The notes below the pieces were generated by a model. It searched no databases and was not told where the DNA came from. It worked only from the letters and a program-made list of their open reading frames with translations. The translations under genes were made by a program, and so were the position numbers. A DNA stretch of 64,000 bases from positions 310,001 through 374,000 of the IMG/VR virus record IMGVR_UViG_3300038463_000730. One strand, 5' to 3'. This document shows positions 6,277 through 62,212 of this stretch, in pieces (the stretch's first letter is position 1; each line of letters opens with the position of its first letter).

Positions 6277-7026
6277 TCATCCCTTCAGGGCATGAAGAAC
6301 GTTGAGCCGTTTGGCGAGCTTTACCGGATCTGTGAAATCGAATTTCATATACGCCTCATCATCCGGTTCACGGAGAATGATTCCGCCGCGCTGTGAATCG
6401 AGGACATCGATCTTGTCAGCCTTCACGATCTGAAAGAAGACGTGACGCCGATTCTTTGTCCATTTCGAAGCGTAGTCGTGAATGGCGTAGACTTCGTCAG
6501 GCTTCTTGCCTGTCGGAACGTAATAGAACTCGTCCCACGATTCTCCAGCCGCCCACGTCTCCCCGTCATCGTCTATCGCTAGCAAAGAGATTCGCTTGTA
6601 GTGACCATCGCAAACTTGGACGTGATAGAACTCCTCCGACAATTTGTTGATGATTCGATAGATATGGATCAATCCGGCACCGCTCGCGGCAGCCCAATGA
6701 TCTTCTTTATCAACGAACTCCTGTTCGATCGGGAATCGTTCCACGAGCGAATTCTCGTCGGGATTGGTTCGCACTTTCAATTCGCCGGACTTCCGATCGA
6801 ACGAATAAGTTCCGGTAATCTCGACATCATTGACGGTGAACGAACGAGTGATGACCAACTTTTTCTTGTCCAACTTGAAGTCATTCGTTTTGACTTTGAA
6901 GTCGAACTCTTGAATGTCGGTGTATTTGCCGGTGGCAAAGTATCGAGTTAGAGGTTTCTTACACCGAGGGCAATTATCCTCGAAGGTAAGCTGGTCATTC
7001 AACGATTCGTAAATCACCCTGCTCAT
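6277..7026 (-). CDS. hypothetical protein (CxxC; shared C-terminal motif)
   Basis: 249 aa, CPRC, ends KRLNVLHALKG. Confidence 0.7.
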   Translation of the reverse strand: MSRVIYESLNDQLTFEDNCPRCKKPLTRYFATGKYTDIQEFDFKVKTNDFKLDKKKLVITRSFTVNDVEITGTYSFDRKSGELKVRTNPDENSLVERFPIEQEFVDKEDHWAAASGAGLIHIYRIINKLSEEFYHVQVCDGHYKRISLLAIDDDGETWAAGESWDEFYYVPTGKKPDEVYAIHDYASKWTKNRRHVFFQIVKADKIDVLDSQRGGIILREPDDEAYMKFDFTDPVKLAKRLNVLHALKG

Positions 7027-7038
7027 CGTTACTCTCCG

Positions 7039-7299
7039 TCAATTGAACTTGTCGTAAAAGTGGATATAACCCCAGATCGGATCATTCTCTGAGATATTCT
7101 TCTCGATGAGCTTTTCCCGAAGCTTTGATCTCGCATCCACGTGGATATGCCCGTCATTCAAGATGGCGCCCAAGAGAAAAGCGACTTCCATCCCGAGTTC
7201 GGACCAGTTCTCCGCGTGATCATGAAACCACCGATACCAATGCTGCATCAACTTTATCTTCGCATTGGGTTCGAGTTTTTTGCTCACCATTGTATTCAT
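7039..7299 (-). CDS. hypothetical protein
   Basis: ORF in operon orientation with RBS. Confidence 0.6.
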   Translation of the reverse strand: MNTMVSKKLEPNAKIKLMQHWYRWFHDHAENWSELGMEVAFLLGAILNDGHIHVDARSKLREKLIEKNISENDPIWGYIHFYDKFN

Positions 7300-7326
7300 C
7301 GAACTACAACTCCCCGCTTCAAAATC

Positions 7327-7359
7327 AAAAGGCCGAGTCGTTTGAACGATCCCGGCCTT
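7327..7359 (-). terminator. intrinsic terminator
   Basis: Minus strand AAGGCCGGGATCG-TTCAAA-CGACTCGGCCTTTT. Confidence 0.6.
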
Positions 7360-7384
7360 CTCGATGCTCAGCTTTCACTGAGCT

Positions 7385-7873
7385 TTACTTCTCGGGTTGA
7401 GTGCCCGGCTTTTCCGCCTGCTCCTGCCGAAGGCCAACCTTATAGGCCTTTTTCTCGATTGCGCGGCGAGCCCAGTTCGGAACAACCGAATGTTCCTCTC
7501 CAGTGAATTTGCCGGAGCGGTCGCGCAGTTTGACGATCGTGTTCGAGCCCTCGCGAAGAACGTCTTCGAGAAGGGACATGGATTCCTCGATCGTCACGAA
7601 TGTTCGGGCATTGTCCTGACTAGACAATGATCCGGTCACCCGCTTCGTGCGATCCTTCTCGAAACGATTCTTGGCCATGTTTCGAGCCAAATCCTTTACG
7701 AATTTGTCTTTTGGAGAACAAAAGGCCAGACCCGCTTGATAGCTGATCTTTCCGTTTTGCTTCTGCCATTCGAGATACACGCAGGCGTATCCCGTACCTT
7801 CGTTGGTTTCGAGCTGAAGGTAACGAAAGTTCTGGCCTGCGTTCCTTGGTTGCTTAGTCGTTGTGGCTGTCAT
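7385..7873 (-). CDS. hypothetical protein
   Basis: 162 aa with GGAG RBS. Confidence 0.7.
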   Translation of the reverse strand: MTATTTKQPRNAGQNFRYLQLETNEGTGYACVYLEWQKQNGKISYQAGLAFCSPKDKFVKDLARNMAKNRFEKDRTKRVTGSLSSQDNARTFVTIEESMSLLEDVLREGSNTIVKLRDRSGKFTGEEHSVVPNWARRAIEKKAYKVGLRQEQAEKPGTQPEK

Positions 7874-7938
7874 TGGTGTCTCCTGGAGACTTCTGTCTCT
7901 CTGCTAGTTCGTGTCGTCATCCGGATCGACATGATCGT

Positions 7939-8256
7939 CTACGGGTCCACACGGATAACTTTTCCGTATATTCCATTCGACGAAGTCCATCCATTCACAT
8001 GGTTCTTGTTGTTGCTGATTTGAAACTGCTGCTTGGGAAACTTGTTCTTTATCGCCGTGATTAGGTGAACGAAACATTTTCCGTTCACCTTACACAAAAC
8101 GATGTCGCCAACGCATAGCGTTTGAATATCTGCGATCGGAGCAACCGTTACGAGTTGACCTGACTCAATCCGACCTTGCATCGAATTACCGTGAGGCCTG
8201 AACGAAACTGTTTTCCCTTCTCTCAGATTCGCTATGTGTTGCGTTGCCCAATTCAT
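7939..8256 (-). CDS. S24/S26-family peptidase-like protein
   Basis: GNSMQG catalytic-Ser motif, VGDIVLC, FVHLI (His in the general-base position). Confidence 0.65.
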   Translation of the reverse strand: MNWATQHIANLREGKTVSFRPHGNSMQGRIESGQLVTVAPIADIQTLCVGDIVLCKVNGKCFVHLITAIKNKFPKQQFQISNNKNHVNGWTSSNGIYGKVIRVDP

Positions 8257-9265: not shown

Positions 9266-9694
9266 TTACTGCTGCCCCTGAATGTAAGCGGAGTTTGTTG
9301 TCGTGAACTGCTGTTTCCACTGCCACTCGTCCTGAACATACATCGCATATTCAGCGGATGTGATTTCGATCTCAGGCTCGGTGTGCATCTTCAACATACC
9401 GATCGCGCGCTCATAATCCTTCGTCTGGTTCATCGGCTGAGTAAGATGAATGTAATGCTCGACATGCTTACCTTGCTTGGCAGCTGACAGCATCTTCTCC
9501 AATGTATCGACCATCGCCTTGCGATAACCGACGCACGCCTTCTCGAAGGTTTCGATATGCGTCTTGCAGTTCTCTTCGAGCTTCGCCAACAGAACGTCAA
9601 CCTTAACTTTTACCATTCTCATGCTAATATCCTCTTCGTCGTAAGACAATCCATTTAGAAAATCTGGAATTTCAAACTGATTTGTGAAATTCAT
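9266..9694 (-). CDS. hypothetical helical protein
   Basis: 142 aa, coupled ORF. Confidence 0.7.
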   Translation of the reverse strand: MNFTNQFEIPDFLNGLSYDEEDISMRMVKVKVDVLLAKLEENCKTHIETFEKACVGYRKAMVDTLEKMLSAAKQGKHVEHYIHLTQPMNQTKDYERAIGMLKMHTEPEIEITSAEYAMYVQDEWQWKQQFTTTNSAYIQGQQ

Positions 9695-10026
9695 ACCATG
9701 ATCTCAAACTTGCTAGCACTGATAATTCGTATACTGTAACAGTTTCCGTGCTTATGAAACGTCCACTCGCCCCTAATATATCCCATCTTTATTGTTTGGG
9801 ACTTGACCATTCGAAAGAAGTCCCCGCGTGACATTGGATACTTTCTCTTTGTAGAGACAGAAGTGAAGATGACGTAATCTTGTTTCGCCTGGGTACAACG
9901 CAACGTGTCTTCGAACTTAAAGTTCTCTTTGAACGAGTACCCTGTTGCTGAAGTACGTGCTCGTCTCGGAACACTGCCCGAAAGATCGAACGGAATCATT
10001 ACAATTGGTTTAGTCTTTTTCGTCAA
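9691..10026 (-). CDS. hypothetical protein, tandem paralog 1
   Basis: MIPFDLSGSVPRRA...KENFKFEDTLR...GYIRGEWTF...IISASKFEIM. Confidence 0.75.
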   Translation of the reverse strand: MTKKTKPIVMIPFDLSGSVPRRARTSATGYSFKENFKFEDTLRCTQAKQDYVIFTSVSTKRKYPMSRGDFFRMVKSQTIKMGYIRGEWTFHKHGNCYSIRIISASKFEIMV

Positions 10027-10028: not shown

Positions 10029-10397
10029 CTATTCCATAACTTCGAGTTTACTCGCGCTGATGATCTTGATCCCGTAACAATTAGCCCGCTTCACGAATGT
10101 CCACGTGCCTCGAATGTAGCCCATGTTCATCTTTTGTTTCAAAAGAAGGGCGTCGAAGTTTAACATCGACATCGGGTACCGAGCTTTAGTAGTCCTGGAG
10201 ATGAACTCGACATAACACGAGCCACGTGTTATCTGGTAACTGTTGTACCGAAGGGTATCCTCGAATTTGAAGTTTTCCTTCATCGTATAGCCATGAGGCG
10301 GATTGCCTTGGTAACTATACGCTCGTCTCGGAACATTTCCAGAGGCATCGAACGGAATCATAAGAGGAGGCTTCGGCGCAGCAGGTTTTCTCGGCAT
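10029..10397 (-). CDS. hypothetical protein, tandem paralog 2
   Basis: MIPFDASGNVPRRA...KENFKFEDTLR...GYIRGTWTF...IISASKLEVME; start moved to ATG 10397. Confidence 0.75.
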   Translation of the reverse strand: MPRKPAAPKPPLMIPFDASGNVPRRAYSYQGNPPHGYTMKENFKFEDTLRYNSYQITRGSCYVEFISRTTKARYPMSMLNFDALLLKQKMNMGYIRGTWTFVKRANCYGIKIISASKLEVME

Positions 10398-10432
10398 ATT
10401 AACCGAATCGTTCGCCCGTTCCGATCTCGACT

Positions 10433-10720
10433 CTAGAGGAACGCCTTGAATTTGCCGCACATTATCATGGGTCGGTGCTCGGCCTGGTAGACGTCCCAAG
10501 TAGATAGATTGATTGACTTTTGATCAATAAAGCAGGAAACGAAATTGAAATTGATCGTCAAACGCATCGGCATTTTGCAACGGGCGCATTCAACTTCCCA
10601 TGTATGATAGATCTCCGGCGCTGCCGATGGATCTGGATACCGATGACCAAACTTTTTCCGAGCCATCGCAATGGCTTCGTAGATTGGAATTTCTTTCATT
10701 TCATCAAGAGCGTGTTTCAT
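10433..10720 (-). CDS. hypothetical protein (CxxC)
   Basis: Start moved to ATG 10720; CARC; ends KFKAFL. Confidence 0.55.
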   Translation of the reverse strand: MKHALDEMKEIPIYEAIAMARKKFGHRYPDPSAAPEIYHTWEVECARCKMPMRLTINFNFVSCFIDQKSINLSTWDVYQAEHRPMIMCGKFKAFL

Positions 10721-14513: not shown

Positions 14514-15110
14514 CTACTTGAGGTTCATCAGTCGATCGATTTTTTGGATCAAATCGTCCCGAGTAGTAAACTGGAGGACGTTCGGTTTCGGATGAATCTT
14601 GCCGGAATGATCCGTATCCGAAATATCGGTACGCATCGTTACCCAATCGAGATGGACCCGGTACAATCTATTCTTCTCTTTGAAGCGAATATCCTCGCCG
14701 GTTAAAAGAAGTTCCCTGTACTTCATGGAGTACAGGTTGTACTGGTAACTATACTCTATGGCATGGTAGTGCCGTATGTTTTGGCAAACAACATGTTCGT
14801 TACGAACGACCCAGTGTTCTTTCTCCCGGCCACGAATACGAAGACCATTGTTCACCAAGCTCAGTGTCATATTGAGCTTCGATTCCACCGGAACGACCAT
14901 ACTGATTTTGCGAAGACGGTTACCAACCCGAGGCTGATCAACTCCCAAGGCGGGTGTTCCGAACACCGCGCCTTTCTTCTTTTTCGGTTCGATGTTGGCT
15001 TTTTTATCCCACTCAAAATCACCCTTGTTGCCCTTGGAGAACTTCTTCTCACAATAAATGCAACAGCCATCCCGACTATTGAGCATCGCTCCTAACGTTG
15101 TGAACTGCAT
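14514..15110 (-). CDS. hypothetical protein (CxxC; shared C-terminal motif)
   Basis: CCIYC; ends KIDRLMNLK. Confidence 0.7.
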   Translation of the reverse strand: MQFTTLGAMLNSRDGCCIYCEKKFSKGNKGDFEWDKKANIEPKKKKGAVFGTPALGVDQPRVGNRLRKISMVVPVESKLNMTLSLVNNGLRIRGREKEHWVVRNEHVVCQNIRHYHAIEYSYQYNLYSMKYRELLLTGEDIRFKEKNRLYRVHLDWVTMRTDISDTDHSGKIHPKPNVLQFTTRDDLIQKIDRLMNLK

Positions 15111-21060: not shown

Positions 21061-21588
21061 ATGACCTCTGCTCCAAAATCATTTCGAGATCTGTTGCCAA
21101 AACCAATAGGAATTCCGATACGCGCTAAATCGCATCCATCTCCACCTCCAATGGTGCAGGCACCGCCCGGCTATTATGAACAGAAGGCGATCCAAACTAA
21201 AGAGATGCTTCGCCTTGTTAATTCCCATCGTTGCCCATTATGCGGTGCGCAGCTCGACGGAGGAGTCTACTCCACGGTTGCCGATGTATTCTGTCGCGCC
21301 AATCCTGATGAATACTCTGCGAAGTACAAGCGCGGTACTTCGGTACCGGTCTCATCGGTACAACGAATTTACTACACCGAAACTCTATATGAAGTGGATA
21401 GTACGCATCTGTATGAAGATACATATCGAAACCTCATCTATACGGTCAACATGACAGTCAACGCCAGAGAAAGAATGAAAACGAAGAAGAAGATCGTTGA
21501 CCTGGAGTGCGCTCGAATTGTCTTGAGCAACAAACTCGACGAACCGAATCTACTCCGGAAGATCAAAGCCTACAGGCTATTCGGTTAG
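21061..21588 (+). CDS. hypothetical protein (CxxC; shared C-terminal motif)
   Basis: Plus-strand ORF filling the gap; CPLC; ends KIKAYRLFG. Confidence 0.65.
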   Translation: MTSAPKSFRDLLPKPIGIPIRAKSHPSPPPMVQAPPGYYEQKAIQTKEMLRLVNSHRCPLCGAQLDGGVYSTVADVFCRANPDEYSAKYKRGTSVPVSSVQRIYYTETLYEVDSTHLYEDTYRNLIYTVNMTVNARERMKTKKKIVDLECARIVLSNKLDEPNLLRKIKAYRLFG

Positions 21589-22270: not shown

Positions 22271-22597
22271 CTACACCATAATGATAAGACGTTCTGGAAT
22301 GAATGAGAAGCCAATATGAATTAAGATTGAGTCAGCCATTCTCATAGCACGGGTTCCTCGTTTTTCGTGTCCAGCGGCACCAGGATAAATGATCTCCCAG
22401 GTCCACGCAGCGCCTCCATATTTTCTTCTGACCTCGGCTACTAACTTTCCATCTCTAGTTTTTCTTTGGAAGACCGAAGAAAAGTTTTCTTTATAGTGAA
22501 AGCCAGGTGTCCACGGAAGTAACAGCCCTTCTAGACTATGACGTCCTAATTGAATACGATCGGCACTTATTTTGTTCACTTGCCATACCACGCCCAA
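22271..22597 (-). CDS. LxPW-family hypothetical protein
   Basis: LLLPW...RAMRMADSIL..IGFSFIPERLIIMV, matches the 59229-62212 family. Confidence 0.65.
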   Translation of the reverse strand: MGVVWQVNKISADRIQLGRHSLEGLLLPWTPGFHYKENFSSVFQRKTRDGKLVAEVRRKYGGAAWTWEIIYPGAAGHEKRGTRAMRMADSILIHIGFSFIPERLIIMV

Positions 22598-29664: not shown

Positions 29665-29880
29665 TTAGCGCATGACTAAAGCCTTAGTTATTCTGGCGAA
29701 TAAGTTGGCCATTTGCGGCAGCACGTGAATCGGAATATCGATCGGTGATCCTAGCGATGTCCAAGTGTGAGGCACGAAACTCACATCACGCCAAATCTTC
29801 ACCCAATTGTCTTCTATCGAAAAACATAGCCGGAAAACAGAACTTGTTTTTGATTCTACATATTCAAGATAATAAGTCAT
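29665..29880 (-). CDS. hypothetical protein (shared C-terminal motif)
   Basis: Start at ATG 29880; ends RITKALVMR. Confidence 0.55.
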   Translation of the reverse strand: MTYYLEYVESKTSSVFRLCFSIEDNWVKIWRDVSFVPHTWTSLGSPIDIPIHVLPQMANLFARITKALVMR

Positions 29881-40609: not shown

Positions 40610-40616
40610 GATCAGC

Positions 40617-42144: not shown

Positions 42145-42488
42145 TTTGCACCAATCATCTTGAAGCCATGATGAGCAAGGATTTGCTCAACTTCATATTG
42201 CCCTTGTTCAAAAGAAGAAACCCTAATACTGCAATGATTGATTGGGTAAACAGAGTAAACCCAACTACAGTACGGGTTGAATGTAAGTTCCGTAACATTA
42301 GCTACCAGCGCACGCTTCACATCGTAAATCTCTTCTACGCAATTCTCGCCTAGATCGGCTTCTCCTTTTTCCCAGCCGAACAACTTCATTTCCCAATGCC
42401 AATATGGTTCATCAACTAGTTTGCCATAGTCGATAACCTCGAATTGCCTTCGAATTCTTTTCCTTGCTTTTTCTGCCTCTGAACTCAT
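42126..42488 (-). CDS. hypothetical protein
   Basis: 120 aa coupled ORF. Confidence 0.55.
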   Translation of the reverse strand: MSSEAEKARKRIRRQFEVIDYGKLVDEPYWHWEMKLFGWEKGEADLGENCVEEIYDVKRALVANVTELTFNPYCSWVYSVYPINHCSIRVSSFEQGQYEVEQILAHHGFKMIGAKWIAMR

Positions 42489-46573: not shown

Positions 46574-46939
46574 TCAAAGCAAAACTTTAAGCGAAACCTT
46601 CTTCCAATGGGCACAATAAAAGGTTCGGTGCGTTTCCAATGCTCCCCAATCCGAACTGGTCAGACGCATAAGCTGAACTTTCGGCCTGTAGGTCTTATGC
46701 GGGACGAGATCCCCGAAGAACTCATCCTCCTTCTCTGCGACTCGGCAAAAGCCCCACTCCAGGTCCCCACTTCCCATCGGGGCGCTCGGTTTCTGAGGCT
46801 GCCAGAAAGAGGAGCCCTGCGCGGTCAGCACGTAGCCATCCATGACACCGACCCCTCCTATAGAGGGAGGCACCGGGGCGGTAGGCTGATGCCGGTCCCA
46901 ATGGATACAGCCAGCGCAACTTTTAGCATTCGAACTCAT
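46574..46939 (-). CDS. Cys-rich hypothetical protein, paralog 1
   Basis: CAGCIHW...WGFC...THRTFYC; start moved to ATG 46939 (ATGA coupling). Confidence 0.65.
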   Translation of the reverse strand: MSSNAKSCAGCIHWDRHQPTAPVPPSIGGVGVMDGYVLTAQGSSFWQPQKPSAPMGSGDLEWGFCRVAEKEDEFFGDLVPHKTYRPKVQLMRLTSSDWGALETHRTFYCAHWKKVSLKVLL

Positions 46940-47181
46940 CGCATAACCGCCAGCCTTCGGTTTTTGAATTGAACGCAACCGAATTCAGCGTGAGTGGATA
47001 AGATCGCGTCTTCCAACCCTTGTAGGTTGTAACACCAGGCATTTGTCGTTGCATCGGTAGCGTCACCAACTACCGATTTGGTTTTTTCACAAGCACCCCA
47101 TTCATTATCAATGTTTATCTTTTGGTCCTGACTCCAATACAAACAATCTTTGCATTTTTCCGGCCATCCGTTTCTTTTCAT
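46936..47181 (-). CDS. Cys-rich hypothetical protein, paralog 2
   Basis: CKDCLYW...WGAC...THAEFGC. Confidence 0.65.
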   Translation of the reverse strand: MKRNGWPEKCKDCLYWSQDQKINIDNEWGACEKTKSVVGDATDATTNAWCYNLQGLEDAILSTHAEFGCVQFKNRRLAVMR

Positions 47182-47184: not shown

Positions 47185-47613
47185 TCAACCCATCAGAACA
47201 ATAGCTTTGCTAATGCTCTCCAAGCGCTTTAGAAAGAAAACCGTATCAGTTGGATTGAAAAGTTTGTTGAAACGTACCGGACTATACTTCCGAACAATCC
47301 CGCCCTTGTTCTTGGCGGAGATCTGGATGTATTTCTTTTCGCGACCGCCTGACCAATCGTATTCTCTACTGAGATAGATGTAGAGAGCGTGAATATCTAG
47401 ACGCTCTTTCGCCAAACGGTAGTAGGTACGCCGAGCGTATTTGTACCTTCTCGAACGACTCTCGTAGTGGTGGTCCGCGTCTTTACAAACAAAGTGATGA
47501 ATCCGCTGGTTATACGTTCCTGAAAATTCACATTGTTTCTTGCAGAAAGGACACGTGCTGCACTGTTTTTGCATCTCTTCAAGAGAGGAAAACTTATCAG
47601 ATGTCTCGAACAT
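47185..47613 (-). CDS. C3H-like hypothetical protein
   Basis: CPFC...C..HHY; ends SISKAIVLMG. Confidence 0.6.
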   Translation of the reverse strand: MFETSDKFSSLEEMQKQCSTCPFCKKQCEFSGTYNQRIHHFVCKDADHHYESRSRRYKYARRTYYRLAKERLDIHALYIYLSREYDWSGGREKKYIQISAKNKGGIVRKYSPVRFNKLFNPTDTVFFLKRLESISKAIVLMG

Positions 47614-48813: not shown

Positions 48814-49134
48814 TTACAGCAGTATTTCTAGTCTTTTTGGGACTACTAAGCCGCCATACTCAGATATTTTGGCATCACAAAACGATTTTGTTTCATCAAG
48901 TGTATCGAATTCAGGCTCGTACAGATTGATAATGCGCCATTTATCGTTTAGACCTTGGCAAATCATATGAGAGACAAAGTCTCCTGGCGGAATGGTATTG
49001 ATATACCCGACTTCAAATCTGTAATGAATGGGATGGTTAACTAATAACCCAATTCGCCACGGCATAAACTTTCTGCCACATGTACGGGCGAAGTATTGTG
49101 CTTCGCTTGGGCGATGATCCGGGCGCCCGTTCAC
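48814..49134 (-). CDS. LxPW-family hypothetical protein
   Basis: KFMPW...TLDETKSFCDAKISEYGGLVVPKRLEILL. Confidence 0.6.
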   Translation of the reverse strand: MNGRPDHRPSEAQYFARTCGRKFMPWRIGLLVNHPIHYRFEVGYINTIPPGDFVSHMICQGLNDKWRIINLYEPEFDTLDETKSFCDAKISEYGGLVVPKRLEILL

Positions 49135-49657: not shown

Positions 49658-50137
49658 TCACACAAATGACCTCATTTTAGACAACCGAAAAAACGACTGA
49701 ATGATATCACGAAACAGATACCAATCTATTTTCGGTCGATACCCACCAACTTTATTGGACCACGGAAATATACTCAGCCTATGATCTTGAGTCGGATCAA
49801 TCTGTTTCTCGGTCTTTGAGTCTGAAAACTTGATGGTGAACTCACTTACATTCAAAAGATTTGTTACGACACTTGGCGTAGAATACTCTACATTTCCACC
49901 GCTAGTTCCAACAATAGTGGTGACATCTATATCTAGACTGTTGAAACGGATAACGTTGTAAAACGAAGTAGGCGTACCACACGACCATTCGCCTAACGGG
50001 AATCTTCCAACAAACCTCTTGCGGAACAAGAATATACTATTATCGAAACGAATATGCAACCCTTTGTTACGTTTACTCTGAATACGAGCATCTCGGATTG
50101 AACGAGATAGTTTTTTCTTAATGATTCTTGCTTTCAT
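49658..50137 (-). CDS. hypothetical protein inside the split tRNA
   Basis: 159 aa; stop codon abuts the tRNA 3' fragment; ends RLSKMRSFV. Confidence 0.6.
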   Translation of the reverse strand: MKARIIKKKLSRSIRDARIQSKRNKGLHIRFDNSIFLFRKRFVGRFPLGEWSCGTPTSFYNVIRFNSLDIDVTTIVGTSGGNVEYSTPSVVTNLLNVSEFTIKFSDSKTEKQIDPTQDHRLSIFPWSNKVGGYRPKIDWYLFRDIIQSFFRLSKMRSFV

Positions 50138-50676: not shown

Positions 50677-50686
50677 TCATATTTCA

Positions 50687-50956
50687 TTATGCCATACAAC
50701 TGCAACGATCGTAACGATCACATATATCCTTTGCATCGTTAATATTGTCGAACAAAAACATATCAGCTTGATCTGCTATCCGATACGGATCAGTAAGCTT
50801 TAGATTTTTCAGGATCGTATGAGTCGTGTGATTGATGATCACATGCGCCTCAAAGCTTCCTGCCACCATTTGGACCATGTAAACATGGCGTTTCGACTCA
50901 CCATAGATCTTATCATCACCGTAACATCCGACAGGTTCCCACCGTAATCGACTCAT
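50687..50956 (-). CDS. hypothetical protein
   Basis: 89 aa coupled ORF. Confidence 0.55.
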   Translation of the reverse strand: MSRLRWEPVGCYGDDKIYGESKRHVYMVQMVAGSFEAHVIINHTTHTILKNLKLTDPYRIADQADMFLFDNINDAKDICDRYDRCSCMA

Positions 50957-51267
50957 TTCATCACCACCAGGCTTTTATTAGTCTCTCGAACGTAGTGATC
51001 TATTGCGATAGCTTTAGCTTCTTCTACAGTTTTGCAATCGCGACGTATACTAAAGCTCGTATTCGATCCTCGTGAGTCTTTTTCCTTGGATGAAGCGAAC
51101 AACGCAAAGCTCGGAGGCTCGAAATCCTTCGTATTGTTCATAATGATATACATCCAATCATCCTTCATGATGAAGGCTTCGACACCAAGTCGGTAACCAA
51201 GCAAAGCATCATTGTTCATGAATGAAGACCAGACCCAATCCTGCCTGGCAACGATGTCATTACTCAC
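50953..51267 (-). CDS. hypothetical protein
   Basis: Ends TVEEAKAIAIDHYVRETNKSLVVMK. Confidence 0.6.
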   Translation of the reverse strand: MSNDIVARQDWVWSSFMNNDALLGYRLGVEAFIMKDDWMYIIMNNTKDFEPPSFALFASSKEKDSRGSNTSFSIRRDCKTVEEAKAIAIDHYVRETNKSLVVMK

Positions 51268-52488: not shown

Positions 52489-52968
52489 TCACAGGAAGGC
52501 AACAACCTTCTTGCAAACGTTCTCGTTATCAACCGGCTTCTTCAAGAAAGCATCGACGCGATGGCGAGGCGCGTTCTTCTCGGACTCTTTATCGACTCCG
52601 AACCAGTAGAAAACATCGTAGTAGATCGTTTTCAACGTATCGAAATCGATCGTAATCTCCAAATTGACATCCGTCTTGCAGTTACGGCACTGCCCGAACG
52701 TCTTCCACACGTTCGTCTGCCACGTAATGGCATGGCCATGACGCTTTACATGCCGCTGGAGGCTTGCGAACGTCTCTTTACGATGCCGCATCCACCGTGC
52801 CAGGAAGAATCCGTACAACGGCATCCCGATACAGAGGATCACGGCAATGAAGAACGGATATTCCAACGCATTTGGGCTATCTGAATAGTCTTTGCGGTGA
52901 AAAGAATAGACTCCCGAGAGTCCAACGACAGCGCCAACAGCAATTAATGCGATCGGAATGATTCCCAT
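52489..52968 (-). CDS. membrane protein with CxxC
   Basis: Two TM helices, CRNC; ends KKVVAFL. Confidence 0.6.
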   Translation of the reverse strand: MGIIPIALIAVGAVVGLSGVYSFHRKDYSDSPNALEYPFFIAVILCIGMPLYGFFLARWMRHRKETFASLQRHVKRHGHAITWQTNVWKTFGQCRNCKTDVNLEITIDFDTLKTIYYDVFYWFGVDKESEKNAPRHRVDAFLKKPVDNENVCKKVVAFL

Positions 52969-52991: not shown

Positions 52992-53225
52992 TTATTTCAT
53001 GTTCCAGAGTTTAGGATCTAGATTCTTTTTGATCGTCAGGTATACTTTTTCGAGGCATGAACGGCAGTAATAGGCTGTCACGGAGCCACCGGCACCGTAA
53101 ACACTGACTGCGGCGCATGTCGTGCCCTTGATGATTCGACCTTTATCGTTAACGAACTCAGAAGGTGTCCCACAGCCACCTCGACAAAAGGCTTTTCCTG
53201 ACGCTTTTTGTAGCTCGATATTCAT
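52992..53225 (-). CDS. small Cys-rich protein
   Basis: CRGGC...YYCRSC; GATATAT motif and GAGG RBS upstream. Confidence 0.6.
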   Translation of the reverse strand: MNIELQKASGKAFCRGGCGTPSEFVNDKGRIIKGTTCAAVSVYGAGGSVTAYYCRSCLEKVYLTIKKNLDPKLWNMK

Positions 53226-53795: not shown

Positions 53796-54005
53796 TTACT
53801 CCAGGTTCCTTAGTTTGGTGTCACGAATCAAAAACAGAATAAGATAGTCTTTACGAGTATCCGTTTGTAATATCTCCCATCCTTTTGAGAGGAACTCGTT
53901 TACCTGTGTTTCTATTTCGAGAGTTTCTTGATCAAATACATACTTGAAACCTTCAAGTGATAGATCAGGATGGAAAGCTACCTTTAGAATTTTGAACTGT
54001 TTCAT
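53796..54005 (-). CDS. small hypothetical protein, paralog 1
   Basis: VNEFLSKGWEI...RDTKLRNLE; start moved to ATG 54005. Confidence 0.6.
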   Translation of the reverse strand: MKQFKILKVAFHPDLSLEGFKYVFDQETLEIETQVNEFLSKGWEILQTDTRKDYLILFLIRDTKLRNLE

Positions 54006-54190
54006 TCTAACAGACGCAGCTTTACGTCTCGCATGAACATCAGCAGCACTTTGTACTTCGTGAAATGCGTTTTTCTCAGGGTCCAACCCTTAGATAACAT
54101 CGCATTGATCGCGTTCTGAAGCTCTTCAGTCTGATAGTTATACTGCGATTCAGAATTGTAATCTACAGTAAATATCTTGCACTCTTTCAT
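54002..54190 (-). CDS. small hypothetical protein, paralog 2
   Basis: INAMLSKGWTL...RDVKLRLLE. Confidence 0.6.
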   Translation of the reverse strand: MKECKIFTVDYNSESQYNYQTEELQNAINAMLSKGWTLRKTHFTKYKVLLMFMRDVKLRLLE

Positions 54191-57820: not shown

Positions 57821-58093
57821 CTAAGCCAAACATCTTACCTTATTCCAAAGTCTCAAGCCTTCTTGTACCGATTCAGCTTTCTGGATTATCTTCCATGCTC
57901 GTTCGGCATCATATTGGGCTGCGAAACCTATAACCGTAATGCTCGGTACCTTAGTGTATTTCCCATAATAGTTTCTAGTTGATCCTTGTTTGCTGTAGTC
58001 TATTAGAGGACAGACTAAAGTAATATCATTATCCTGATCAACTATCGTACATAAGGTACCGGCATTGTTTCCTTTAACGTATAGTCCGATCAT
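57821..58093 (-). CDS. hypothetical protein
   Basis: 90 aa coupled ORF. Confidence 0.5.
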   Translation of the reverse strand: MIGLYVKGNNAGTLCTIVDQDNDITLVCPLIDYSKQGSTRNYYGKYTKVPSITVIGFAAQYDAERAWKIIQKAESVQEGLRLWNKVRCLA

Positions 58094-59228: not shown

Positions 59229-59522
59229 CTAAATAAACACTTCGAGCTTTTTCGGTAACATCAAAAACCTGTCGGATATCGCAGCAGCCTCAATTGCTGC
59301 CATGGCTTCTCCACGTGTGGGATAAGTTTTGCGCCATGCCGAACAAGAAGAGACAACCGGTCCACCGTAGTAATCGGCGCACCATACATAACTCTTTTGA
59401 TCGATATTCCAACCGTCACGGACTACCAATCCAAGTTGATATTCCAACCGTCCCATTGTTACGAGATAGCCTGCCAGTCCAGAATCATCAACAATCCATC
59501 GGCAGATAGTCATAGGAAACAC
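59229..59522 (-). CDS. LxPW-family hypothetical protein
   Basis: TRGEAMAAIEAAAISDRFLMLPKKLEVFI. Confidence 0.55.
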   Translation of the reverse strand: MFPMTICRWIVDDSGLAGYLVTMGRLEYQLGLVVRDGWNIDQKSYVWCADYYGGPVVSSCSAWRKTYPTRGEAMAAIEAAAISDRFLMLPKKLEVFI

Positions 59523-59773: not shown

Positions 59774-60055
59774 TCATAACATCACGATCAGCCGTTGTGG
59801 CGCGATGATGTACCCATGTTCGATAGCGTACTTGTCTGCCGTGTCCTTGGCATTTTCCAGGCTTTCATTGTTAATGAATCTCTTGGTCGGAAACCAGTGT
59901 TCGTAAACATACGATAAAAATTCTTCCGGATTGGAAGAGTATGTATCGAATGCCGTTAATCGCATCTGACCAAAACTATCATGACGTTCCCACAATCCAA
60001 CCGAGGTCCGTTGCCACGGACCGAGCACTATTTTCTTTAGCGTAACATGAGTCAT
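59774..60055 (-). CDS. LxPW-family hypothetical protein
   Basis: IVLGPW...SLENAKDTADKYAIEHGYIIAPQRLIVML; start moved to ATG 60055. Confidence 0.65.
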   Translation of the reverse strand: MTHVTLKKIVLGPWQRTSVGLWERHDSFGQMRLTAFDTYSSNPEEFLSYVYEHWFPTKRFINNESLENAKDTADKYAIEHGYIIAPQRLIVML

Positions 60056-60306
60056 AGCATGCATTGGTGCTTGTCGGACAGGAGAAGGTAACCTAGGTCT
60101 ACTAGTGCGGCTTCGGCTCGTGCTACGCATTGCTCGATCGTTTCACCAAATCCCTCGTCATAATGACTGGTTGCTGGATTCCATACACCGTAATCAAACT
60201 TGCCGTTCCGGTAGAAGATGATCGCGATCAATGCTCCGTTCGTAGCTGTTCTGGTAACATGGAACTGAGAGACCTCCCAAGGTTTCAGGATAATCTTCTG
60301 GCTCAT
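60052..60306 (-). CDS. LxPW-family hypothetical protein
   Basis: IILKPW...ARAEAALVDLGYLLLSDKHQCML. Confidence 0.65.
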   Translation of the reverse strand: MSQKIILKPWEVSQFHVTRTATNGALIAIIFYRNGKFDYGVWNPATSHYDEGFGETIEQCVARAEAALVDLGYLLLSDKHQCML

Positions 60307-60593
60307 AACATGCTTCTATACTTGTCTTTTAAACAGCGAAAGCCAATACCAGTTGCCATCTTGTCTGCAATCATCTTGGCTTCTTCAAGTGAAGACGGTC
60401 TTGCCGCACCTTCACTTATACAATGGTCTTTTGAGTTGTAGACAAAGATATTATAGGTATTCTCAATGGCATTGAATAGAACGATGCATTGAGAATGTTC
60501 GAACCGTTTATTCTTTCGAACATATACCTTGTTTCCAATTTCTACCCACGGTAGCAAGATAAATCGGTCATCTTTTGGTGATGTGCTGGCCAT
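60303..60593 (-). CDS. LxPW-family hypothetical protein
   Basis: ILLPW...SLEEAKMIADKMATGIGFRCLKDKYRSML. Confidence 0.65.
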   Translation of the reverse strand: MASTSPKDDRFILLPWVEIGNKVYVRKNKRFEHSQCIVLFNAIENTYNIFVYNSKDHCISEGAARPSSLEEAKMIADKMATGIGFRCLKDKYRSML

Positions 60594-60616
60594 GATGACG
60601 TAGTATCCTCCGCGAA

Positions 60617-60895
60617 CTAGAGCATGCATTTTAGTTTCTCGAACTCTTCTTCTGTCAAGAGTCTGTAGAATCGACGAGCAACGCAGTCCGCTCGATTCAT
60701 CGCCTCTCCAATCGTCGGACCGGAGCCTTGAAGTATCTCGCCGTTATCGTAAACGTACCAACCCCAAGGTTCTTTCCTCGAATCAACAAGAGTATTGTCC
60801 AATACTAGGTGAACTCGAACATATCCGTCCGTTCCTTTACGATGCCATGGGTAAAGTTGGTCGTCTGTAGAGACTTCCCAAGGCAAAAGAATCAT
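60617..60895 (-). CDS. LxPW-family hypothetical protein
   Basis: MILLPW...TIGEAMNRAD...EKLKCML. Confidence 0.65.
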   Translation of the reverse strand: MILLPWEVSTDDQLYPWHRKGTDGYVRVHLVLDNTLVDSRKEPWGWYVYDNGEILQGSGPTIGEAMNRADCVARRFYRLLTEEEFEKLKCML

Positions 60896-61230
60896 AAGAA
60901 CGCTCGATGCTTGACTTTTGTCAGCAGAAAACCAAATTCTCGAAGCTTTTTATCAGCGGCAAACTTCGCTTTACGTACAGAATCGATATTCTCCGAATAA
61001 CCGGAGTCCTCCGACCCTGGTAAGTGGTAAACAAGGTACTGCCAGATCTCATTGTTAGGATAAATCATCGCAACAATTGATCCGTTGACGTTTTTTCTAT
61101 AATAAGATGGTACGGTATGGTATTGGGAATAGGTCGTTACCCAAGGTAGAACCATACGATACCTAGCGATCGTGTCTGCCACGGCTTTTCCCTGTTTTTG
61201 CTCTGGATTGACGTATCCGTTTCGCCTCAT
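60892..61230 (-). CDS. LxPW-family hypothetical protein
   Basis: MVLPW...KAKFAADKKLREFGFLLTKVKHRAFL. Confidence 0.65.
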   Translation of the reverse strand: MRRNGYVNPEQKQGKAVADTIARYRMVLPWVTTYSQYHTVPSYYRKNVNGSIVAMIYPNNEIWQYLVYHLPGSEDSGYSENIDSVRKAKFAADKKLREFGFLLTKVKHRAFL

Positions 61231-61603
61231 CCGAGCCAGGAACGTGCGGACGCTTGTTTAGTTCGTACAATATGTCCTTTAATAGGATCGTAACCGATCT
61301 AAATGTCGCCGCATTCTTTTGATTTGAGCCCGTAATTGGAAGAGCCGGATCGAAACGAAGATTCGGTGTATGACCTGATTGATACCGGTATACCGCGTAG
61401 AGTGGTGGGGTAGTGTGCTCATCATAAACCACGCCATTCTCGTCCTCGATCAACCCATCCCCGAGGTTATGCGTACTACGCAAGTTGTTTTTGTAACATG
61501 AGTCACGCAATGTTAGAAGTTGGCGCGTCGGAATCTTCTCGACCTCCGATGGCGTAGCTTCTTCGTAATCAGGTTTACGAGGCATAGATTTTCTAGGCAT
61601 CAT
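61163..61603 (-). CDS. hypothetical protein
   Basis: IPTRQLLTLRD...LYELNKRPHVP...AKRIRQSRAK. Confidence 0.6.
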   Translation of the reverse strand: MMPRKSMPRKPDYEEATPSEVEKIPTRQLLTLRDSCYKNNLRSTHNLGDGLIEDENGVVYDEHTTPPLYAVYRYQSGHTPNLRFDPALPITGSNQKNAATFRSVTILLKDILYELNKRPHVPGSDEAKRIRQSRAKTGKSRGRHDR

Positions 61604-61896
61604 TGCTGTTGGCTTTCATAGTCGAAGATGAGTTGCTGAAGATAGTTTGCGCGAAGATTAATCCAACGCAATAACCCGAGCATCACTAGCATCGGTCCCA
61701 ACATACAAAGATCCTCCGGCCTCTTGAGAAAGAGGCCTTCGCAAAATATTGCGCTGATTACGGCCAGGATGATCGCTCCGATCACAGTTATGATCCGCCA
61801 CGCAACAAGCGCTTCCTCGGCTTTTTTGAACTCCGACTCCGAAATCCTGCGTTTACGTGGCTGTTTCAACGTGAATTCGTTTTCGCTGATGTCCAT
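61600..61896 (-). CDS. membrane protein
   Basis: Start moved to ATG 61896; two TM helices. Confidence 0.55.
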   Translation of the reverse strand: MDISENEFTLKQPRKRRISESEFKKAEEALVAWRIITVIGAIILAVISAIFCEGLFLKRPEDLCMLGPMLVMLGLLRWINLRANYLQQLIFDYESQQQ

Positions 61897-61954
61897 CACT
61901 AACTCAGGATCTTCGGACCGACCGCTCGACTTCCGAGCGCATTGAAAGATTTGA

Positions 61955-62212
61955 TCACTGAAAAATCGAAAACCGTTCGCCAAGCAAACGGTAGCCCAAT
62001 TCTTTAGCTTTTCGATCGACAATCTCCACGCCTTCGTCTTTCGTCTGGCAATGCCCCTGCAATATATGCCCGTCTTCTCTAATCAGCATCCAAAACCAGC
62101 TGTCTTCAAACGGATCTTTTATCACCTTGTGGATAAATCTACGATTCGTCCCAACTTCCTGACGCCAAAAGATTCTTTCGGAAAGAGTTTGCCAGGGACC
62201 GTGTATCCGCAT
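61955..62212 (-). CDS. LxPW-family hypothetical protein
   Basis: IHGPW...TKDEGVEIVDRKAKELGYRLLGERFSIFQ. Confidence 0.65.
   Translation of the reverse strand: MRIHGPWQTLSERIFWRQEVGTNRRFIHKVIKDPFEDSWFWMLIREDGHILQGHCQTKDEGVEIVDRKAKELGYRLLGERFSIFQ

What the first reader, a model, noticed from the sequence alone, without database searches (positions are those of the whole stretch)
6277..62212. Shared C-terminal amphipathic motif on many otherwise unrelated small proteins
Seen: [RK]-h-x-x-h-x-x-h-x(-G)-COOH (h = hydrophobic) recurs: RLNVLHALKG (6277), RLFKAKTFVG (8865), KIDRLMNLK (14514), KIKAYRLFG (21061), RLDRLHTFY (27885), RITKALVMR (29665), ELLKLKCML (30437), RIDQAWVMS, RLDRIWVMK, RWDRNWVMG, RFERAWVMQ, RLDNAWSLA (33313-34992), RYDKLKTMT (40190), SISKAIVLMG (47185), RLSKMRSFV (49658), EFEKLKCML (60617). 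The upstream parts of these proteins belong to different families. Inference: a modular C-terminal docking or sorting tag, for example for capsid packaging and co-injection, for a common scaffold, or as a degron for the phage ClpP/MoxR machinery, added to diverse effector domains.
Basis: partly seen in the sequence, partly recalled or inferred. Interest (0 to 1): 0.62.

Follow-up and report, generated by a model that had tools for sequence, protein, structure and literature searches.

The report
Shared C-terminal tag in huge phages
In a group of uncultivated 0.4-megabase peat phages, one in eight to one in four genes, almost all small and otherwise unrelated, end in the same six-residue tail (Lys/Arg, Leu, x, x, Phe/Met/Leu, x, end), which looks like an address label read by one still unknown receptor.

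Summary
The window is part of a 434,688-bp phage record. All 16 quoted C-termini are present and 14 fit a sharper motif: [KR] at -6, aliphatic at -5, Phe/Met/Leu at -2, any last residue. Genome-wide it ends 56 of 551 ORFs, against 3.7 expected from internal positions and 14.6 from column shuffles. The register is exact: 55 hits one residue from the end against about 4 at other offsets.

The signal sits in codon positions 1 and 2, with nothing after the stop codon, so it acts at protein level. Carriers fall into about 64 sequence clusters. Profile comparisons and two AlphaFold models show different folds.

Related huge phages carry their own dialects: K-L-K-A-F-[LIW] on 130 of 680 ORFs, and K-[LI]-x-[VI]-F-[KS] with Phe at -2 in 97 of 330 ORFs. 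Carriers are the fast-turnover gene pool: 7% are shared between two relatives, against 43% of other genes.

This points to a tag read in trans by one co-evolving receptor. Its destination is not established. Prohead loading, Clp proteolysis and a host hub all remain open. I found no earlier description.

The parts
9691..10026 (-). carrier gene, 111 aa, tail ...SKFEIMV (tail codons 9694-9720); paralogue of the next gene
10029..10499 (-). carrier gene, 156 aa, tail ...SKLEVME
14514..15110 (-). carrier gene, 198 aa, tail ...DRLMNLK
21061..21588 (+). carrier gene, 175 aa, tail ...KAYRLFG (basic residue at -7); orthologue in G001 ends ...KTFLVFG
22271..22597 (-). carrier gene, 108 aa, F2 family, tail ...ERLIIMV
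27885..28433 (-). carrier gene, 182 aa, tail ...DRLHTFY
29665..29901 (-). carrier gene, 78 aa, tail ...TKALVMR; followed by a tRNA, not by a coding gene
30437..30790 (-). carrier gene, 117 aa, tail ...LKLKCML
33313..33708 (-). carrier gene, 131 aa, first of five tandem paralogues (F3, N-terminal CxxC), tail ...DQAWVMS; followed by a tRNA
33718..34059 (-). carrier gene, 113 aa, F3, tail ...DRIWVMK
34044..34322 (-). carrier gene, 92 aa, F3, tail ...DRNWVMG
34322..34648 (-). carrier gene, 108 aa, F3, tail ...ERAWVMQ
34633..34992 (-). carrier gene, 119 aa, F3, tail ...DNAWSLA
35855..36178 (-). carrier gene, 107 aa, tail ...KSLRNLL
37428..37664 (-). carrier gene, 78 aa, tail ...NRIRVFK
39353..39664 (-). 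carrier gene, 103 aa, tail ...VRYANFL
40190..40666 (-). carrier gene, 158 aa, tail ...DKLKTMT
42126..42488 (-). carrier gene, 120 aa, F2 family, tail ...AKWIAMR
46936..47181 (-). carrier gene, 81 aa, tail ...RRLAVMR
47185..47613 (-). carrier gene, 142 aa, tail ...KAIVLMG (basic residue at -7)
48814..49134 (-). carrier gene, 106 aa, F2 family, tail ...KRLEILL
49658..50137 (-). carrier gene, 159 aa, tail ...SKMRSFV
50687..50956 (-). carrier gene, 89 aa, tail ...DRCSCMA
50953..51267 (-). carrier gene, 104 aa, tail ...KSLVVMK (basic residue at -7)
52489..52968 (-). carrier gene, 159 aa; the only in-window member of family F1 (invariant His...CxxC...Cys, the last Cys at -8); two N-terminal hydrophobic segments; tail ...CKKVVAFL
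52992..53225 (-). carrier gene, 77 aa, tail ...PKLWNMK; orthologue in G001 ends ...PKLWIFK (Met to Phe, as in that genome's consensus)
53796..54086 (-). carrier gene, 96 aa, tail ...TKLRNLE
57821..58093 (-). carrier gene, 90 aa, tail ...NKVRCLA
59229..59522 (-). carrier gene, 97 aa, F2 family, tail ...KKLEVFI
59774..60130 (-). carrier gene (118 aa ORF; public gene calls give 93 aa), F2 family, tail ...QRLIVML
60052..60306 (-). carrier gene, 84 aa, F2 family, tail ...DKHQCML
60303..60629 (-). carrier gene, 108 aa, F2 family, tail ...DKYRSML
60617..60895 (-). carrier gene, 92 aa, F2 family, tail ...EKLKCML
61955..62212 (-). carrier gene, 85 aa, F2-like (...ELGYRLL...), tail ...ERFSIFQ
   Evidence: score -17.7 bits
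   Evidence: score -18.2 bits

Best explanation
The tail is a short linear motif at protein level that serves as a common recognition tag. One receptor, shared by all carriers of a phage, reads it in trans.

What the receptor most likely grips (inferred from the sequence pattern):
- the penultimate large unbranched hydrophobic side chain (Phe, Met or Leu at -2);
- the free alpha-carboxylate exactly one residue further on; this would explain why the last side chain is free to vary while the register is exact;
- the Lys/Arg-Leu pair at -6/-5, presented on a one- to two-turn C-terminal helix that starts at a cap residue (Ser, Thr, Asp or Pro) at -7.

Because only three or four positions are constrained, the tag can arise again and again at the ends of new small genes. 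Tag and receptor drift together, giving each phage lineage its own dialect. I rate this general part at about 0.65-0.7.

Where the tag sends its bearers is not shown. My first choice, at about 0.25-0.3, is loading of a large and rapidly changing set of small soluble accessory proteins into the prohead for co-injection with the DNA. That would be the C-terminal counterpart of the N-terminal capsid targeting sequence of the T4 internal proteins, and of the C-terminal cargo-loading peptides of encapsulins.

Shown: enrichment, exact register, protein-level constraint, unrelated bodies, clade-wide occurrence with lineage-specific consensus, faster turnover of bodies than of tails. Inferred: trans recognition, the pocket logic, the destination.
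For: 1. Enrichment and exact register: 56 of 551 ORFs against 3.7 or 14.6 expected, and 55 at offset 1 against about 4.4 elsewhere.
2. Protein level, not DNA. The information sits in codon positions 1 and 2, with none downstream of the stop. In G001 the synonymous codons at motif positions follow genome usage; for example Ala at -3 is GCA 21, GCT 14, GCC 9, GCG 5. Carriers followed by a tRNA rather than a gene keep the tail.
3. Short and sharply bounded: no information upstream of about -11.
4. Unrelated bodies. The 68 carriers fall into 64 clusters once the last 10 residues are removed. In G001, 130 carriers fall into 91 clusters. hhalign probability is at most 1.1% between six hand-built families. 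The AlphaFold models differ: F1 is helix, then beta-meander, then C-terminal helix 102-107 (pLDDT 74.5); F2 is a six-stranded sheet, then helix, then strand, then a less confident tail (pLDDT 92.7 overall, 72 for the last residues).
5. Clade-wide with dialects. G000 has [KR]-[LFY]-x-[VN]-[MLF]-x. G001 (TerL 61%, capsid protein 82% identical) has K-L-K-A-F-[LIW] on 130 of 680 ORFs. G005 has K-[LI]-x-[VI]-F-[KS], with Phe at -2 in 97 of 330 ORFs. Closer relatives (L025, L027, L029) have 12 of 49, 11 of 36 and 5 of 9. Ala at -3 in the AT-rich G001 runs against compositional drift. An orthologous pair changes ...KLWNMK to ...KLWIFK, following each genome's consensus. A genome-wide concerted preference across unrelated folds is what a single trans partner predicts.
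6. Tails are more conserved than bodies: 70% against 49% identity in 8 orthologous pairs (P about 0.001).
7. Carriers are the hypervariable pool: 5 of 73 have a homologue in G001, against 204 of 478 other genes (Fisher P 2e-10).
8. For the prohead reading specifically:
- Carriers are small (median 100-136 aa), soluble (0-2% have a membrane-like segment), rich in Cys and aromatic residues, with CxxC in 34-37% against 15% of other small ORFs.
- A very large capsid offers many equivalent sites.
Against: - No receptor was identified. Trans recognition is an inference from sequence statistics.
- In family F1 the residue at -8 is an invariant Cys that looks like a zinc ligand, so there the tail is tied directly to the fold with no flexible linker. 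AlphaFold models it as a helix of ordinary confidence, which could mean it packs in cis.

Against prohead loading in particular:
- No gene of the head module carries the tail, so there is no scaffold with the same tail.
- The capsid protein is 82% identical between G000 and G001 although their dialects differ.
- G002 (97% complete) has the same head genes but few carriers, and the G003 fragment has none.
- Carrier bodies are not consistently basic: median net charge is +2 in G000 and -2 in G001.
- One carrier (52489-52968) has two membrane-like segments.
- About 70-130 different cargo species would be without precedent.
- The capsid-carrier complex prediction gave no verdict, which counts neither way.
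Confidence: 0.3

Rival explanations
1. C-terminal degradation tag. The tail hands short-lived accessory proteins to a Clp-type protease. This would be the phage's own ClpP pair working with a host unfoldase or adaptor, giving timed removal of early proteins and recycling of amino acids during long infections in peat.
For: - The phage encodes two genuine ClpP genes (170 and 161 bits) plus a third ClpP-like gene in the window at 20334-20942.
- The ClpP pair sits in a syntenic module conserved in all five genomes compared.
- No Clp-type unfoldase is encoded, so a host partner would be needed. Different hosts (GC 27-48%) could explain the dialects.
- C-terminal degrons with an exact register to the carboxylate are the commonest C-terminal signals known in bacteria (own knowledge: ssrA and MuA-type ClpX motifs).
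- The tag abuts the folded body without a linker.
Against: - The last residue is free to vary and is often Lys, Glu or Ser, unlike the non-polar ends of known ClpX or ClpA tags.
- The ClpP genes are equally present in G002 and in the G003 fragment, which have few or no carriers.
- There is no precedent for a phage tagging 13-29% of its genes for destruction.
- Nothing was tested biochemically.
Confidence: 0.2
2. Docking motif for an abundant host hub, such as the beta sliding clamp, a chaperone, the ribosome or RNA polymerase. Each carrier brings a different activity to, or blocks, the same host machine. The dialects would reflect different hosts.
For: - The spacing of hydrophobics at -8, -5, -2 and -1 and the form K-L-K-A-F resemble clamp-binding peptides (Q-L-x-L-F) and C-terminal PIP boxes (own knowledge; consensus).
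- The phage encodes no clamp of its own.
- Phage GC content ranges from 27 to 48% while core proteins stay 60-82% identical. That fits receptors which differ because the hosts differ.
Against: - One hundred or more competing ligands for a low-copy hub such as the clamp make little sense.
- Carriers have no replication or repair domains.
- The conserved Gln of clamp motifs is replaced by Lys or Arg.
- The host is unknown, so nothing could be tested.
Confidence: 0.15
3. A structural element acting in cis. The tail is a C-terminal capping helix that packs back on each small domain. This could be because all carriers descend from one ancient, extremely diverged family, or because such a cap stabilises small proteins or protects their ends from exoproteolysis.
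For: - In F1 the Cys at -8 is invariant together with one His and two other Cys, so the tail starts inside the fold.
- AlphaFold models the F1 tail as a helix at pLDDT about 79.
- Many carriers occur in tandem arrays of paralogues.
Against: - There is no similarity outside the tail by phmmer/HMM or hhalign.
- F1 and F2 have different predicted topologies.
- The F2 tail is the least confident part of an otherwise very confident model.
- A cis role does not predict one genome-wide consensus that shifts in concert between phages (Met/Val, then Phe/Ala, then Phe/Val-Ile) across unrelated folds.
- It also does not predict indifference to the last side chain combined with an exact register.
Confidence: 0.1
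4. A nucleotide-level signal lying in the last codons, such as a ribosome-binding site or coupling signal for the next gene, a promoter, a terminator or a recombination site. The peptide would be only its translation.
For: - Many carriers end ...ATG NNN TGA with an overlapping ATGA start of the next gene.
- AAA-GCT-TTT (K-A-F) would be a palindrome in G001.
Against: - Third codon positions carry almost no information, and nothing is conserved after the stop.
- Synonymous codon use at every motif position matches genome-wide use in G001.
- Met, Phe and Leu alternate at -2 while Ile and Val are excluded, although all have T at the second codon position.
- The tail is kept where a tRNA gene, not a coding gene, follows.
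- The same peptide pattern holds in genomes of 27%, 31% and 48% GC.
Confidence: 0.02

Closest known systems
Capsid targeting sequence (CTS) of the phage T4 internal proteins
   Same: In both cases a roughly ten-residue terminal peptide is the only thing shared by a diverse, hypervariable set of small phage proteins (PMC3012670). Bodies turn over quickly between related phages.
   Different: - The T4 CTS is N-terminal and is cut off by the prohead protease. Here the tag is at the extreme C-terminus with an exact register to the free end.
- T4 has a handful of such proteins. These phages have 70-130.
- Presence in the virion is not shown here.
Cargo-loading (targeting) peptides of encapsulins
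   Same: Both are short C-terminal peptides on unrelated cargo proteins. Encapsulin peptides bind the inside of an HK97-fold shell, the same fold class as tailed-phage capsids (own knowledge).
   Different: The encapsulin consensus is Gly/Ser-rich (L-x-I-G-S-L type) and is not locked to the last residue. Here the pattern is K/R-L-x-x-F/M/L-x with an exact register. Binding to the capsid protein could not be assessed.
HbYX motif of proteasome activators (and the C-terminal tail of HslU)
   Same: The logic is the same: hydrophobic, then aromatic or large hydrophobic, then any residue, then the free carboxylate. The penultimate side chain and the carboxylate are read, and the last side chain is free.
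   Different: Tyr is almost absent here; the residue is Phe, Met or Leu. There is an added K/R-L at -6/-5. No proteasome or HslV gene is present in the phage. HbYX sits on a few ATPase activators, not on a tenth of a proteome.
C-terminal sorting signals of eukaryotic cells (PTS1 -SKL, dilysine KKXX)
   Same: Both are very short, convergently evolvable C-terminal codes on many unrelated proteins, read by one receptor with an exact register. KKXX also tolerates any last residues.
   Different: These belong to another domain of life and depend on membrane-bound organelles. No comparable compartment or receptor is known for these phages.
ssrA-type and MuA-type C-terminal degrons for ClpXP
   Same: Both are anchored at the C-terminus, and the MuA type also combines basic and hydrophobic residues. 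ClpP genes are present in the phage.
   Different: Known tags need non-polar last residues. Here the last residue varies and is often charged. The phage encodes no unfoldase.
C-terminal translocation signals of Dot/Icm (type IV) and ESX (type VII) substrates
   Same: In both cases about a tenth of a proteome, or many small paralogous proteins, carry a C-terminal signal. That signal is read by an FtsK/VirD4-like ATPase. The phage has an FtsK/SpoIIIE-family ATPase in a conserved module next to its ClpP genes.
   Different: Those signals are longer and looser (Dot/Icm) or end in a hydrophobic last residue (ESX). No secretion apparatus is recognisable here. The link to the ATPase is only an idea.

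Membership tests
T4-type capsid targeting sequence | A short terminal peptide is the only element shared by diverse small phage proteins | tested here: met
   carriers are unrelated outside the last 9 residues.
T4-type capsid targeting sequence | N-terminal position, removed by the prohead protease | tested here: not met
   The motif is locked to the C-terminus, and no shared N-terminal motif was seen.
T4-type capsid targeting sequence | Bearers are found inside the virion | not testable with these tools
   These are uncultivated phages, and no proteome is available.
Encapsulin cargo-loading peptide | C-terminal peptide on unrelated cargo | tested here: met
Encapsulin cargo-loading peptide | Binds the inner face of the HK97-fold shell protein | tested here: inconclusive
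   The complex prediction of the major capsid protein with an F2 carrier gave no verdict.
HbYX docking motif | Hydrophobic, Tyr, any residue at the extreme C-terminus | tested here: not met
   The register and the free last residue fit, but -2 is Phe, Met or Leu, and Tyr is about 1% or less.
HbYX docking motif | A proteasome or HslV ring as partner | tested here: not met
   There is no Pfam Proteasome match in the phage genome. The host is unknown.
ClpX/ClpA C-terminal degron | Non-polar last two or three residues | tested here: not met
   The last residue varies: Leu, Lys, Glu, Ala, Ser, Trp.
ClpX/ClpA C-terminal degron | A Clp protease and an unfoldase are available | tested here: inconclusive
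   ClpP is present in two copies plus a ClpP-like gene. There is no AAA_2 unfoldase in the phage, and the host is unknown.
Sliding-clamp binding motif (Q-L-x-L-F or PIP box) | Conserved Gln at position 1, hydrophobics at positions 2, 4 and 5 | tested here: not met
   Position 1 is Lys or Arg, and position 4 is Ala in G001.
Sliding-clamp binding motif (Q-L-x-L-F or PIP box) | Bearers are replication or repair proteins, and a clamp is present | tested here: not met
   Carriers have no known domains. The phage has no DnaN, gp45 or PCNA.
PDZ or tail-specific protease ligand | Hydrophobic last residue, and a PDZ or S41 protein as reader | tested here: not met
   The last residue varies. There is no PDZ_2 match. 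The only S41 hit is sub-threshold, in a 510-aa protein that is absent from the tail-rich relatives.
One diverged paralogous family (distant homology of whole proteins) | Detectable similarity outside the tail | tested here: not met
   phmmer/HMM clustering gives 64 clusters for 68 carriers. hhalign probability is at most 1.1% among six families.
One diverged paralogous family (distant homology of whole proteins) | The same predicted fold | tested here: not met
   F1 and F2 models differ in the order of their secondary-structure elements. Only two families were folded.

The most novel reading that the evidence does not exclude
These huge phages run a proteome-wide protein sorting code of their own. 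A dedicated, co-evolving receptor reads a six-residue C-terminal label and sends 70-130 different small proteins to one destination. That destination could be the inside of a giant capsid, for mass co-injection of a fast-evolving set of effectors. It could also be a phage-built compartment or translocase, for example the conserved FtsK-like ATPase and ClpP module. Either would be the first PTS1-like sorting system described for a virus of bacteria.
Probability: 0.25. Interest if true: 0.92.

Novelty: new variant of a known kind. Interest (0 to 1): 0.8.

Why it matters
- Huge phages are mostly 'dark matter': hundreds of small genes with no relatives and no handle for experiments. Here a tenth to a quarter of those genes label themselves with one short tail.
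- The tail gives a single biochemical hook, a peptide that can be used for pull-downs, to find the machine that reads it. That would assign a common fate to more than a hundred unknown proteins at once.
- If the destination is the capsid, the tag would define a large injected effector set and a ready-made way to load foreign proteins into phage heads.
- If the destination is a protease, it would show proteome-scale timing by degradation in a virus.
- The lineage-specific dialects give a natural co-variation experiment for finding the receptor.
- The motif is also a practical marker for recognising this clade and its accessory gene pool in metagenomes.

Tried and rejected
- Nucleotide-level explanations (ribosome-binding site, coupling signal, palindrome, recombination site) were rejected by codon-position information and synonymous codon use.
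- Stop-codon recoding. A suppressor-type tRNA (anticodon CUA) lies just past the window, and carriers use TAG more often. However, reading TAG, TGA or TAA as sense does not improve the gene map, so the standard code was kept throughout.
- Pfam and PHROG scans of 20 carriers found nothing usable.
- The word-index homologue searches found only the phage itself and near-identical contigs. The exhaustive profile search with family F1 found only small proteins with the same tail.
- Fold searches of both models (PDB Foldseek, VIA wide, BFVD) gave no clear match. The best for F2 was an AP2-like sheet-plus-helix at Z 5.8 and weak hits to uncharacterised phage proteins. The ESM Atlas gave only unnamed viral clusters.
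- A promoter search by k-mer enrichment in upstream gaps, meant to date the carriers as early or late, found no clear motif.
- A phylogenetic profile looked for genes present in the tail-rich G000, G001 and G005 but not in G002 or G003. It returned only a glycosyltransferase, bS21, a deaminase, a helicase, ribonucleotide reductase and a Nudix protein, none of which is a plausible reader. G003 and G005 are also fragments.
- A weak S41 (tail-specific protease) hit in a 510-aa head-module protein was below the cut-off, had no PDB relative, and the gene is absent from G001 and G005. I dropped it.
- Complex prediction of the major capsid protein with an F2 carrier gave no verdict and counts neither way.
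- No clamp, proteasome, PDZ or Clp unfoldase was found in the phage.
- Four literature searches found no description of this motif.
The NCBI relative could not be opened as a whole genome.

Full report
**Where the window lies.** The 64-kb window is bases 310,001-374,000 of a 434,688-bp virus record. The record has 48% GC, and nearly all genes are on the minus strand. ARAGORN tRNA genes in the window and 24 in the whole genome; Rfam confirms 16 of the window's 17 at its gathering score. The same phage lies on a 502,994-bp JGI contig and in several peat metagenomes from at least four studies. It is a tailed phage with a portal, a large terminase and an HK97-type major capsid protein. It has no cultivated relative: the terminase is at most 25% identical to any INPHARED phage.

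Recognisable genes in the window:
- a DUF2201 VWA/metallopeptidase protein and a MoxR-like ATPase;
- a PARP-like protein and an ADP-ribosylglycohydrolase;
- an NAD-dependent ligase;
- a ClpP-like protein;
- three Nudix-domain proteins, one of them fused to the NMNAT domain listed below;
- a polynucleotide kinase/phosphatase;
- NAMPT, an NMNAT-Nudix fusion, a radical SAM enzyme and DUF7873.

With the whole genome in the Python box and a crude codon-usage gene set of 551 ORFs, I found the following:
- The pattern [KR][hydrophobic]xx[MLF]x-COOH ends 56 ORFs. The same pattern at internal positions predicts 3.7, and shuffling each C-terminal column among proteins predicts 14.6 +/- 3.5.
- A two-component mixture model converges on 66-73 members, or 12-13% of ORFs.
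- The model's profile is: Cys or hydrophobic at -8; a polar or helix-capping residue at -7; Lys/Arg at -6 (85%); Leu/Phe/Tyr at -5; Val/Asn at -3; Met 43-45%, Leu 22-27%, Phe 25-26% at -2; any residue at -1.
- The register is exact: 55 ORFs at offset 1, against 3 at offset 0, 11 at offset 2 and a mean of 4.4 elsewhere.
- The first 50 kb of T4, which is full of small early genes, gives 1 of 83 by the regex and 0 by the matrix.
I count 34 carriers in the window.

**Protein or DNA?** Many carriers end ATG-NNN-TGA with an overlapping start for the next gene, so I first suspected a coupling signal. Four results rule this out:
- The information is in codon positions 1 and 2, hardly any is in position 3, and there is none after the stop.
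- Met, Phe and Leu alternate at -2, while Ile and Val, which also have T in the middle of the codon, are excluded.
- Carriers followed by a tRNA gene keep the tail.
- In the AT-rich relative G001, the synonymous codons at each motif position simply follow genome usage.

**Are the bodies related?**
- With the last ten residues removed, 68 carriers fall into 64 phmmer/HMM clusters.
- By eye there are families. F1 has 16 paralogues with invariant His, CxxC and a Cys at -8. F2 has an N-terminal Pro-Trp, then a sheet, then a helix ending ...Gly-Tyr/Phe. F3 comprises the five tandem genes at 33313-34992. There are also some larger proteins.
- Profile-profile comparison of six such families gives probabilities of at most 1.1%, with or without the tails.
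- AlphaFold gives different topologies. F1 is an N-terminal helix, a beta-meander and a C-terminal helix made of the tail (pLDDT 74.5). F2 is a six-stranded sheet, a long helix, a strand, and then the tail as a short turn with the lowest confidence of the model (92.7 overall, 72 at the end).
- Neither model matches a solved fold clearly. F2 resembles many uncharacterised small phage proteins only weakly.
- No carrier has a Pfam or PHROG function.
- No information is shared upstream of about -11.

**Relatives.** An exhaustive profile search with F1 found about 24 small proteins, 14 of them from other samples, and all have the same tail. Their contigs include a 423-kb NCBI genome, and they carry the tail on many neighbouring, unrelated genes: 12 of 49, 11 of 36 and 5 of 9 ORFs.

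The terminase then led to a whole clade in IMG/VR, of which I examined four records:

| Record | Size and GC | Identity to G000 | Result |
|---|---|---|---|
| G001 | 447,763 bp, 31% GC | terminase 61%, capsid protein 82% | 130 of 680 ORFs end K-L-K-A-F-[LIW]; Phe at -2 in 143 ORFs; 91 sequence clusters; 26% of ORFs up to 200 aa |
| G005 | 176-kb fragment, 27% GC | terminase 52% | K-[LI]-x-[VI]-F-[KS]; Phe at -2 in 97 of 330 ORFs |
| G002 | 361 kb | terminase 61% | only a handful of carriers |
| G003 | 220 kb read | terminase 61% | none; this record is a fragment |

The constant features are Lys/Arg at -6, an aliphatic residue at -5, Phe/Met/Leu at -2 and the exact register. Positions -4, -3 and -2 differ by lineage. 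Ala at -3 in an AT-rich genome goes against composition. One orthologous pair changes ...KLWNMK (window 52992-53225) to ...KLWIFK in G001.

**Dynamics.**
- Only 5 of 73 carriers of G000 have a detectable homologue in G001, against 204 of 478 other genes (P 2e-10).
- Where orthologues exist in closer relatives, the last eight residues are 70% identical and the bodies 49%.
- Carriers are short: median 136 aa in G000 and 100 aa in G001.
- They are rarely membrane-like and are rich in Cys and aromatic residues, with CxxC in about a third. They are not consistently basic.

**Interpretation.** Several properties together point to one reading:
- the motif is very short and can evolve convergently;
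- it is locked to the free end and indifferent to the last side chain;
- it sits on unrelated folds;
- it is kept under selection while the bodies come and go;
- its consensus shifts in concert within each genome.

This is the behaviour of a signal read in trans by one partner, as with PTS1, KKXX or HbYX. It is not the behaviour of a structural element of each fold. I rate that general reading at about 0.65-0.7.

A cis capping role (about 0.1) is kept alive by F1, where the tail begins at a probable zinc ligand.

- ClpP (two genuine copies and one ClpP-like), the FtsK-like ATPase beside them, and MoxR with the DUF2201 protein are all conserved core genes. They are also present in the relatives with few or no carriers.
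- The phage has no clamp, proteasome, PDZ domain or Clp unfoldase.
- A phylogenetic profile and a weak S41 hit led nowhere.
- The one complex prediction allowed (capsid protein with an F2 carrier) gave no verdict.

**Destination.** By precedent, the nearest thing in phage biology is the T4 capsid targeting sequence. It is the only shared element of a diverse, hypervariable set of injected defence-countering proteins (PMC3012670). Encapsulins show that C-terminal peptides can load cargo into HK97-fold shells. On that basis I put prohead loading first, at about 0.25-0.3.

The points against it are real:
- no head-module gene shares the tail;
- relatives with the same head genes have few carriers;
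- one carrier looks membrane-bound;
- the number of cargo species would be unprecedented.

A degron for Clp proteolysis (about 0.2) and docking to a host hub (about 0.15) remain open. The wide GC range of the clade, against well-conserved core proteins, would fit a reader that differs because the hosts differ.

**Novelty.** Shared terminal targeting peptides are a known kind of thing. This particular motif, its exact C-terminal register, its scale (13-29% of predicted genes) and its lineage dialects in a clade of huge phages were not found in four full-text searches, and I do not know of a description.

**Caveats.**
- My gene sets come from a simple ORF and codon-usage caller, so absolute counts are approximate.
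- Only two families were folded.
- G003 and G005 are fragments.
- The host is unknown.
- The standard genetic code was used throughout. A suppressor-type tRNA exists, but recoding is not supported.

Noticed in passing
window 63599-63674 and 63693-63768; genome 374601-374678 and 374731-374804 (just past the window's end): Three tRNA-like genes have irregular anticodon loops that ARAGORN cannot name; the two inside the window score as tRNA in Rfam. There is also a suppressor-type tRNA with anticodon CUA. Reading TAG as sense does not improve the gene map, so there is no sign of recoding.
   Followed up: partly
whole genome; window carriers: Carrier genes use stop codons differently from other genes. 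Carriers have TGA 30, TAG 21, TAA 15; others have TAA 221, TGA 175, TAG 66 (chi-square P 5e-5). The effect is weaker in G001. Part of it comes from ATGA stop-start overlaps, and the rest is unexplained. Together with the CUA tRNA, this raises the idea that read-through could mask the tail.
   Followed up: no
window 35110-35772 (+), inside the 860-bp gap between the five-paralogue array and the gene at 35855-36178: A GC-rich 220-aa ORF lies on the opposite strand to its neighbours and has no Pfam match. Two peat metatranscriptomes hold 340-375-nt contigs identical to 35285-35678. Apart from one tRNA, this is the only part of the 6 kb examined that appears in RNA libraries. The strand and the nature of the RNA are not settled.
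   Followed up: partly
window 10987-12492, 15138-17015, 17067-17990, 23193-23957, 41605-42144, 54508-55980, 58090-59121: This is a dense NAD/ADP-ribose gene set. It comprises a PARP-like protein with WGR and regulatory domains, an NAD-dependent ligase, an ADP-ribosylglycohydrolase, two Nudix proteins, NAMPT and an NMNAT-Nudix fusion. The NAMPT and NMNAT pair looks like the phage NAD-reconstitution route used against NAD-depleting defences (own knowledge). Both genes are also present in G001.
   Followed up: no
genome 251783-258355 (outside the window): A syntenic module is conserved across all five related genomes (two of its seven genes were not detected in the G005 fragment). In order it contains a 485-aa unknown protein, an FtsK/SpoIIIE-family ATPase, DUF192, a 518-aa unknown protein, ClpP, ClpP and a DksA/TraR zinc finger. 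Its function is unknown, and it remains a candidate for the tag's machinery.
   Followed up: partly
genome 246063-246476: A phage-encoded ribosomal protein bS21 homologue is also present in G001, G002 and G005.
   Followed up: no
L128:3146-3865 and L128:5062-5406 (G002): In G002 the major capsid protein gene is split into two ORFs about 1.2 kb apart. This suggests an intron, an intein-free insertion or a homing element.
   Followed up: no
window about 50640-50680, just downstream of the gene ending at 50687: This sequence reads like the 5' half of a tRNA (acceptor stem and D-arm). Neither ARAGORN nor Rfam called it, and it lies inside the doubtful ORF 50192-50632.
   Followed up: no
window 596-1249 and 1309-1839: Two paralogous proteins, one of them ending in a strongly acidic tail, lie next to the DUF2201/MoxR pair. 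There are weak homologues in G001 and G002.
   Followed up: no
whole record: IMG/VR labels the record a provirus cut from a 502,994-bp contig. I did not examine the remaining 68 kb. Jumbo-phage arms that lack hallmark genes are often mis-trimmed in this way.
   Followed up: no
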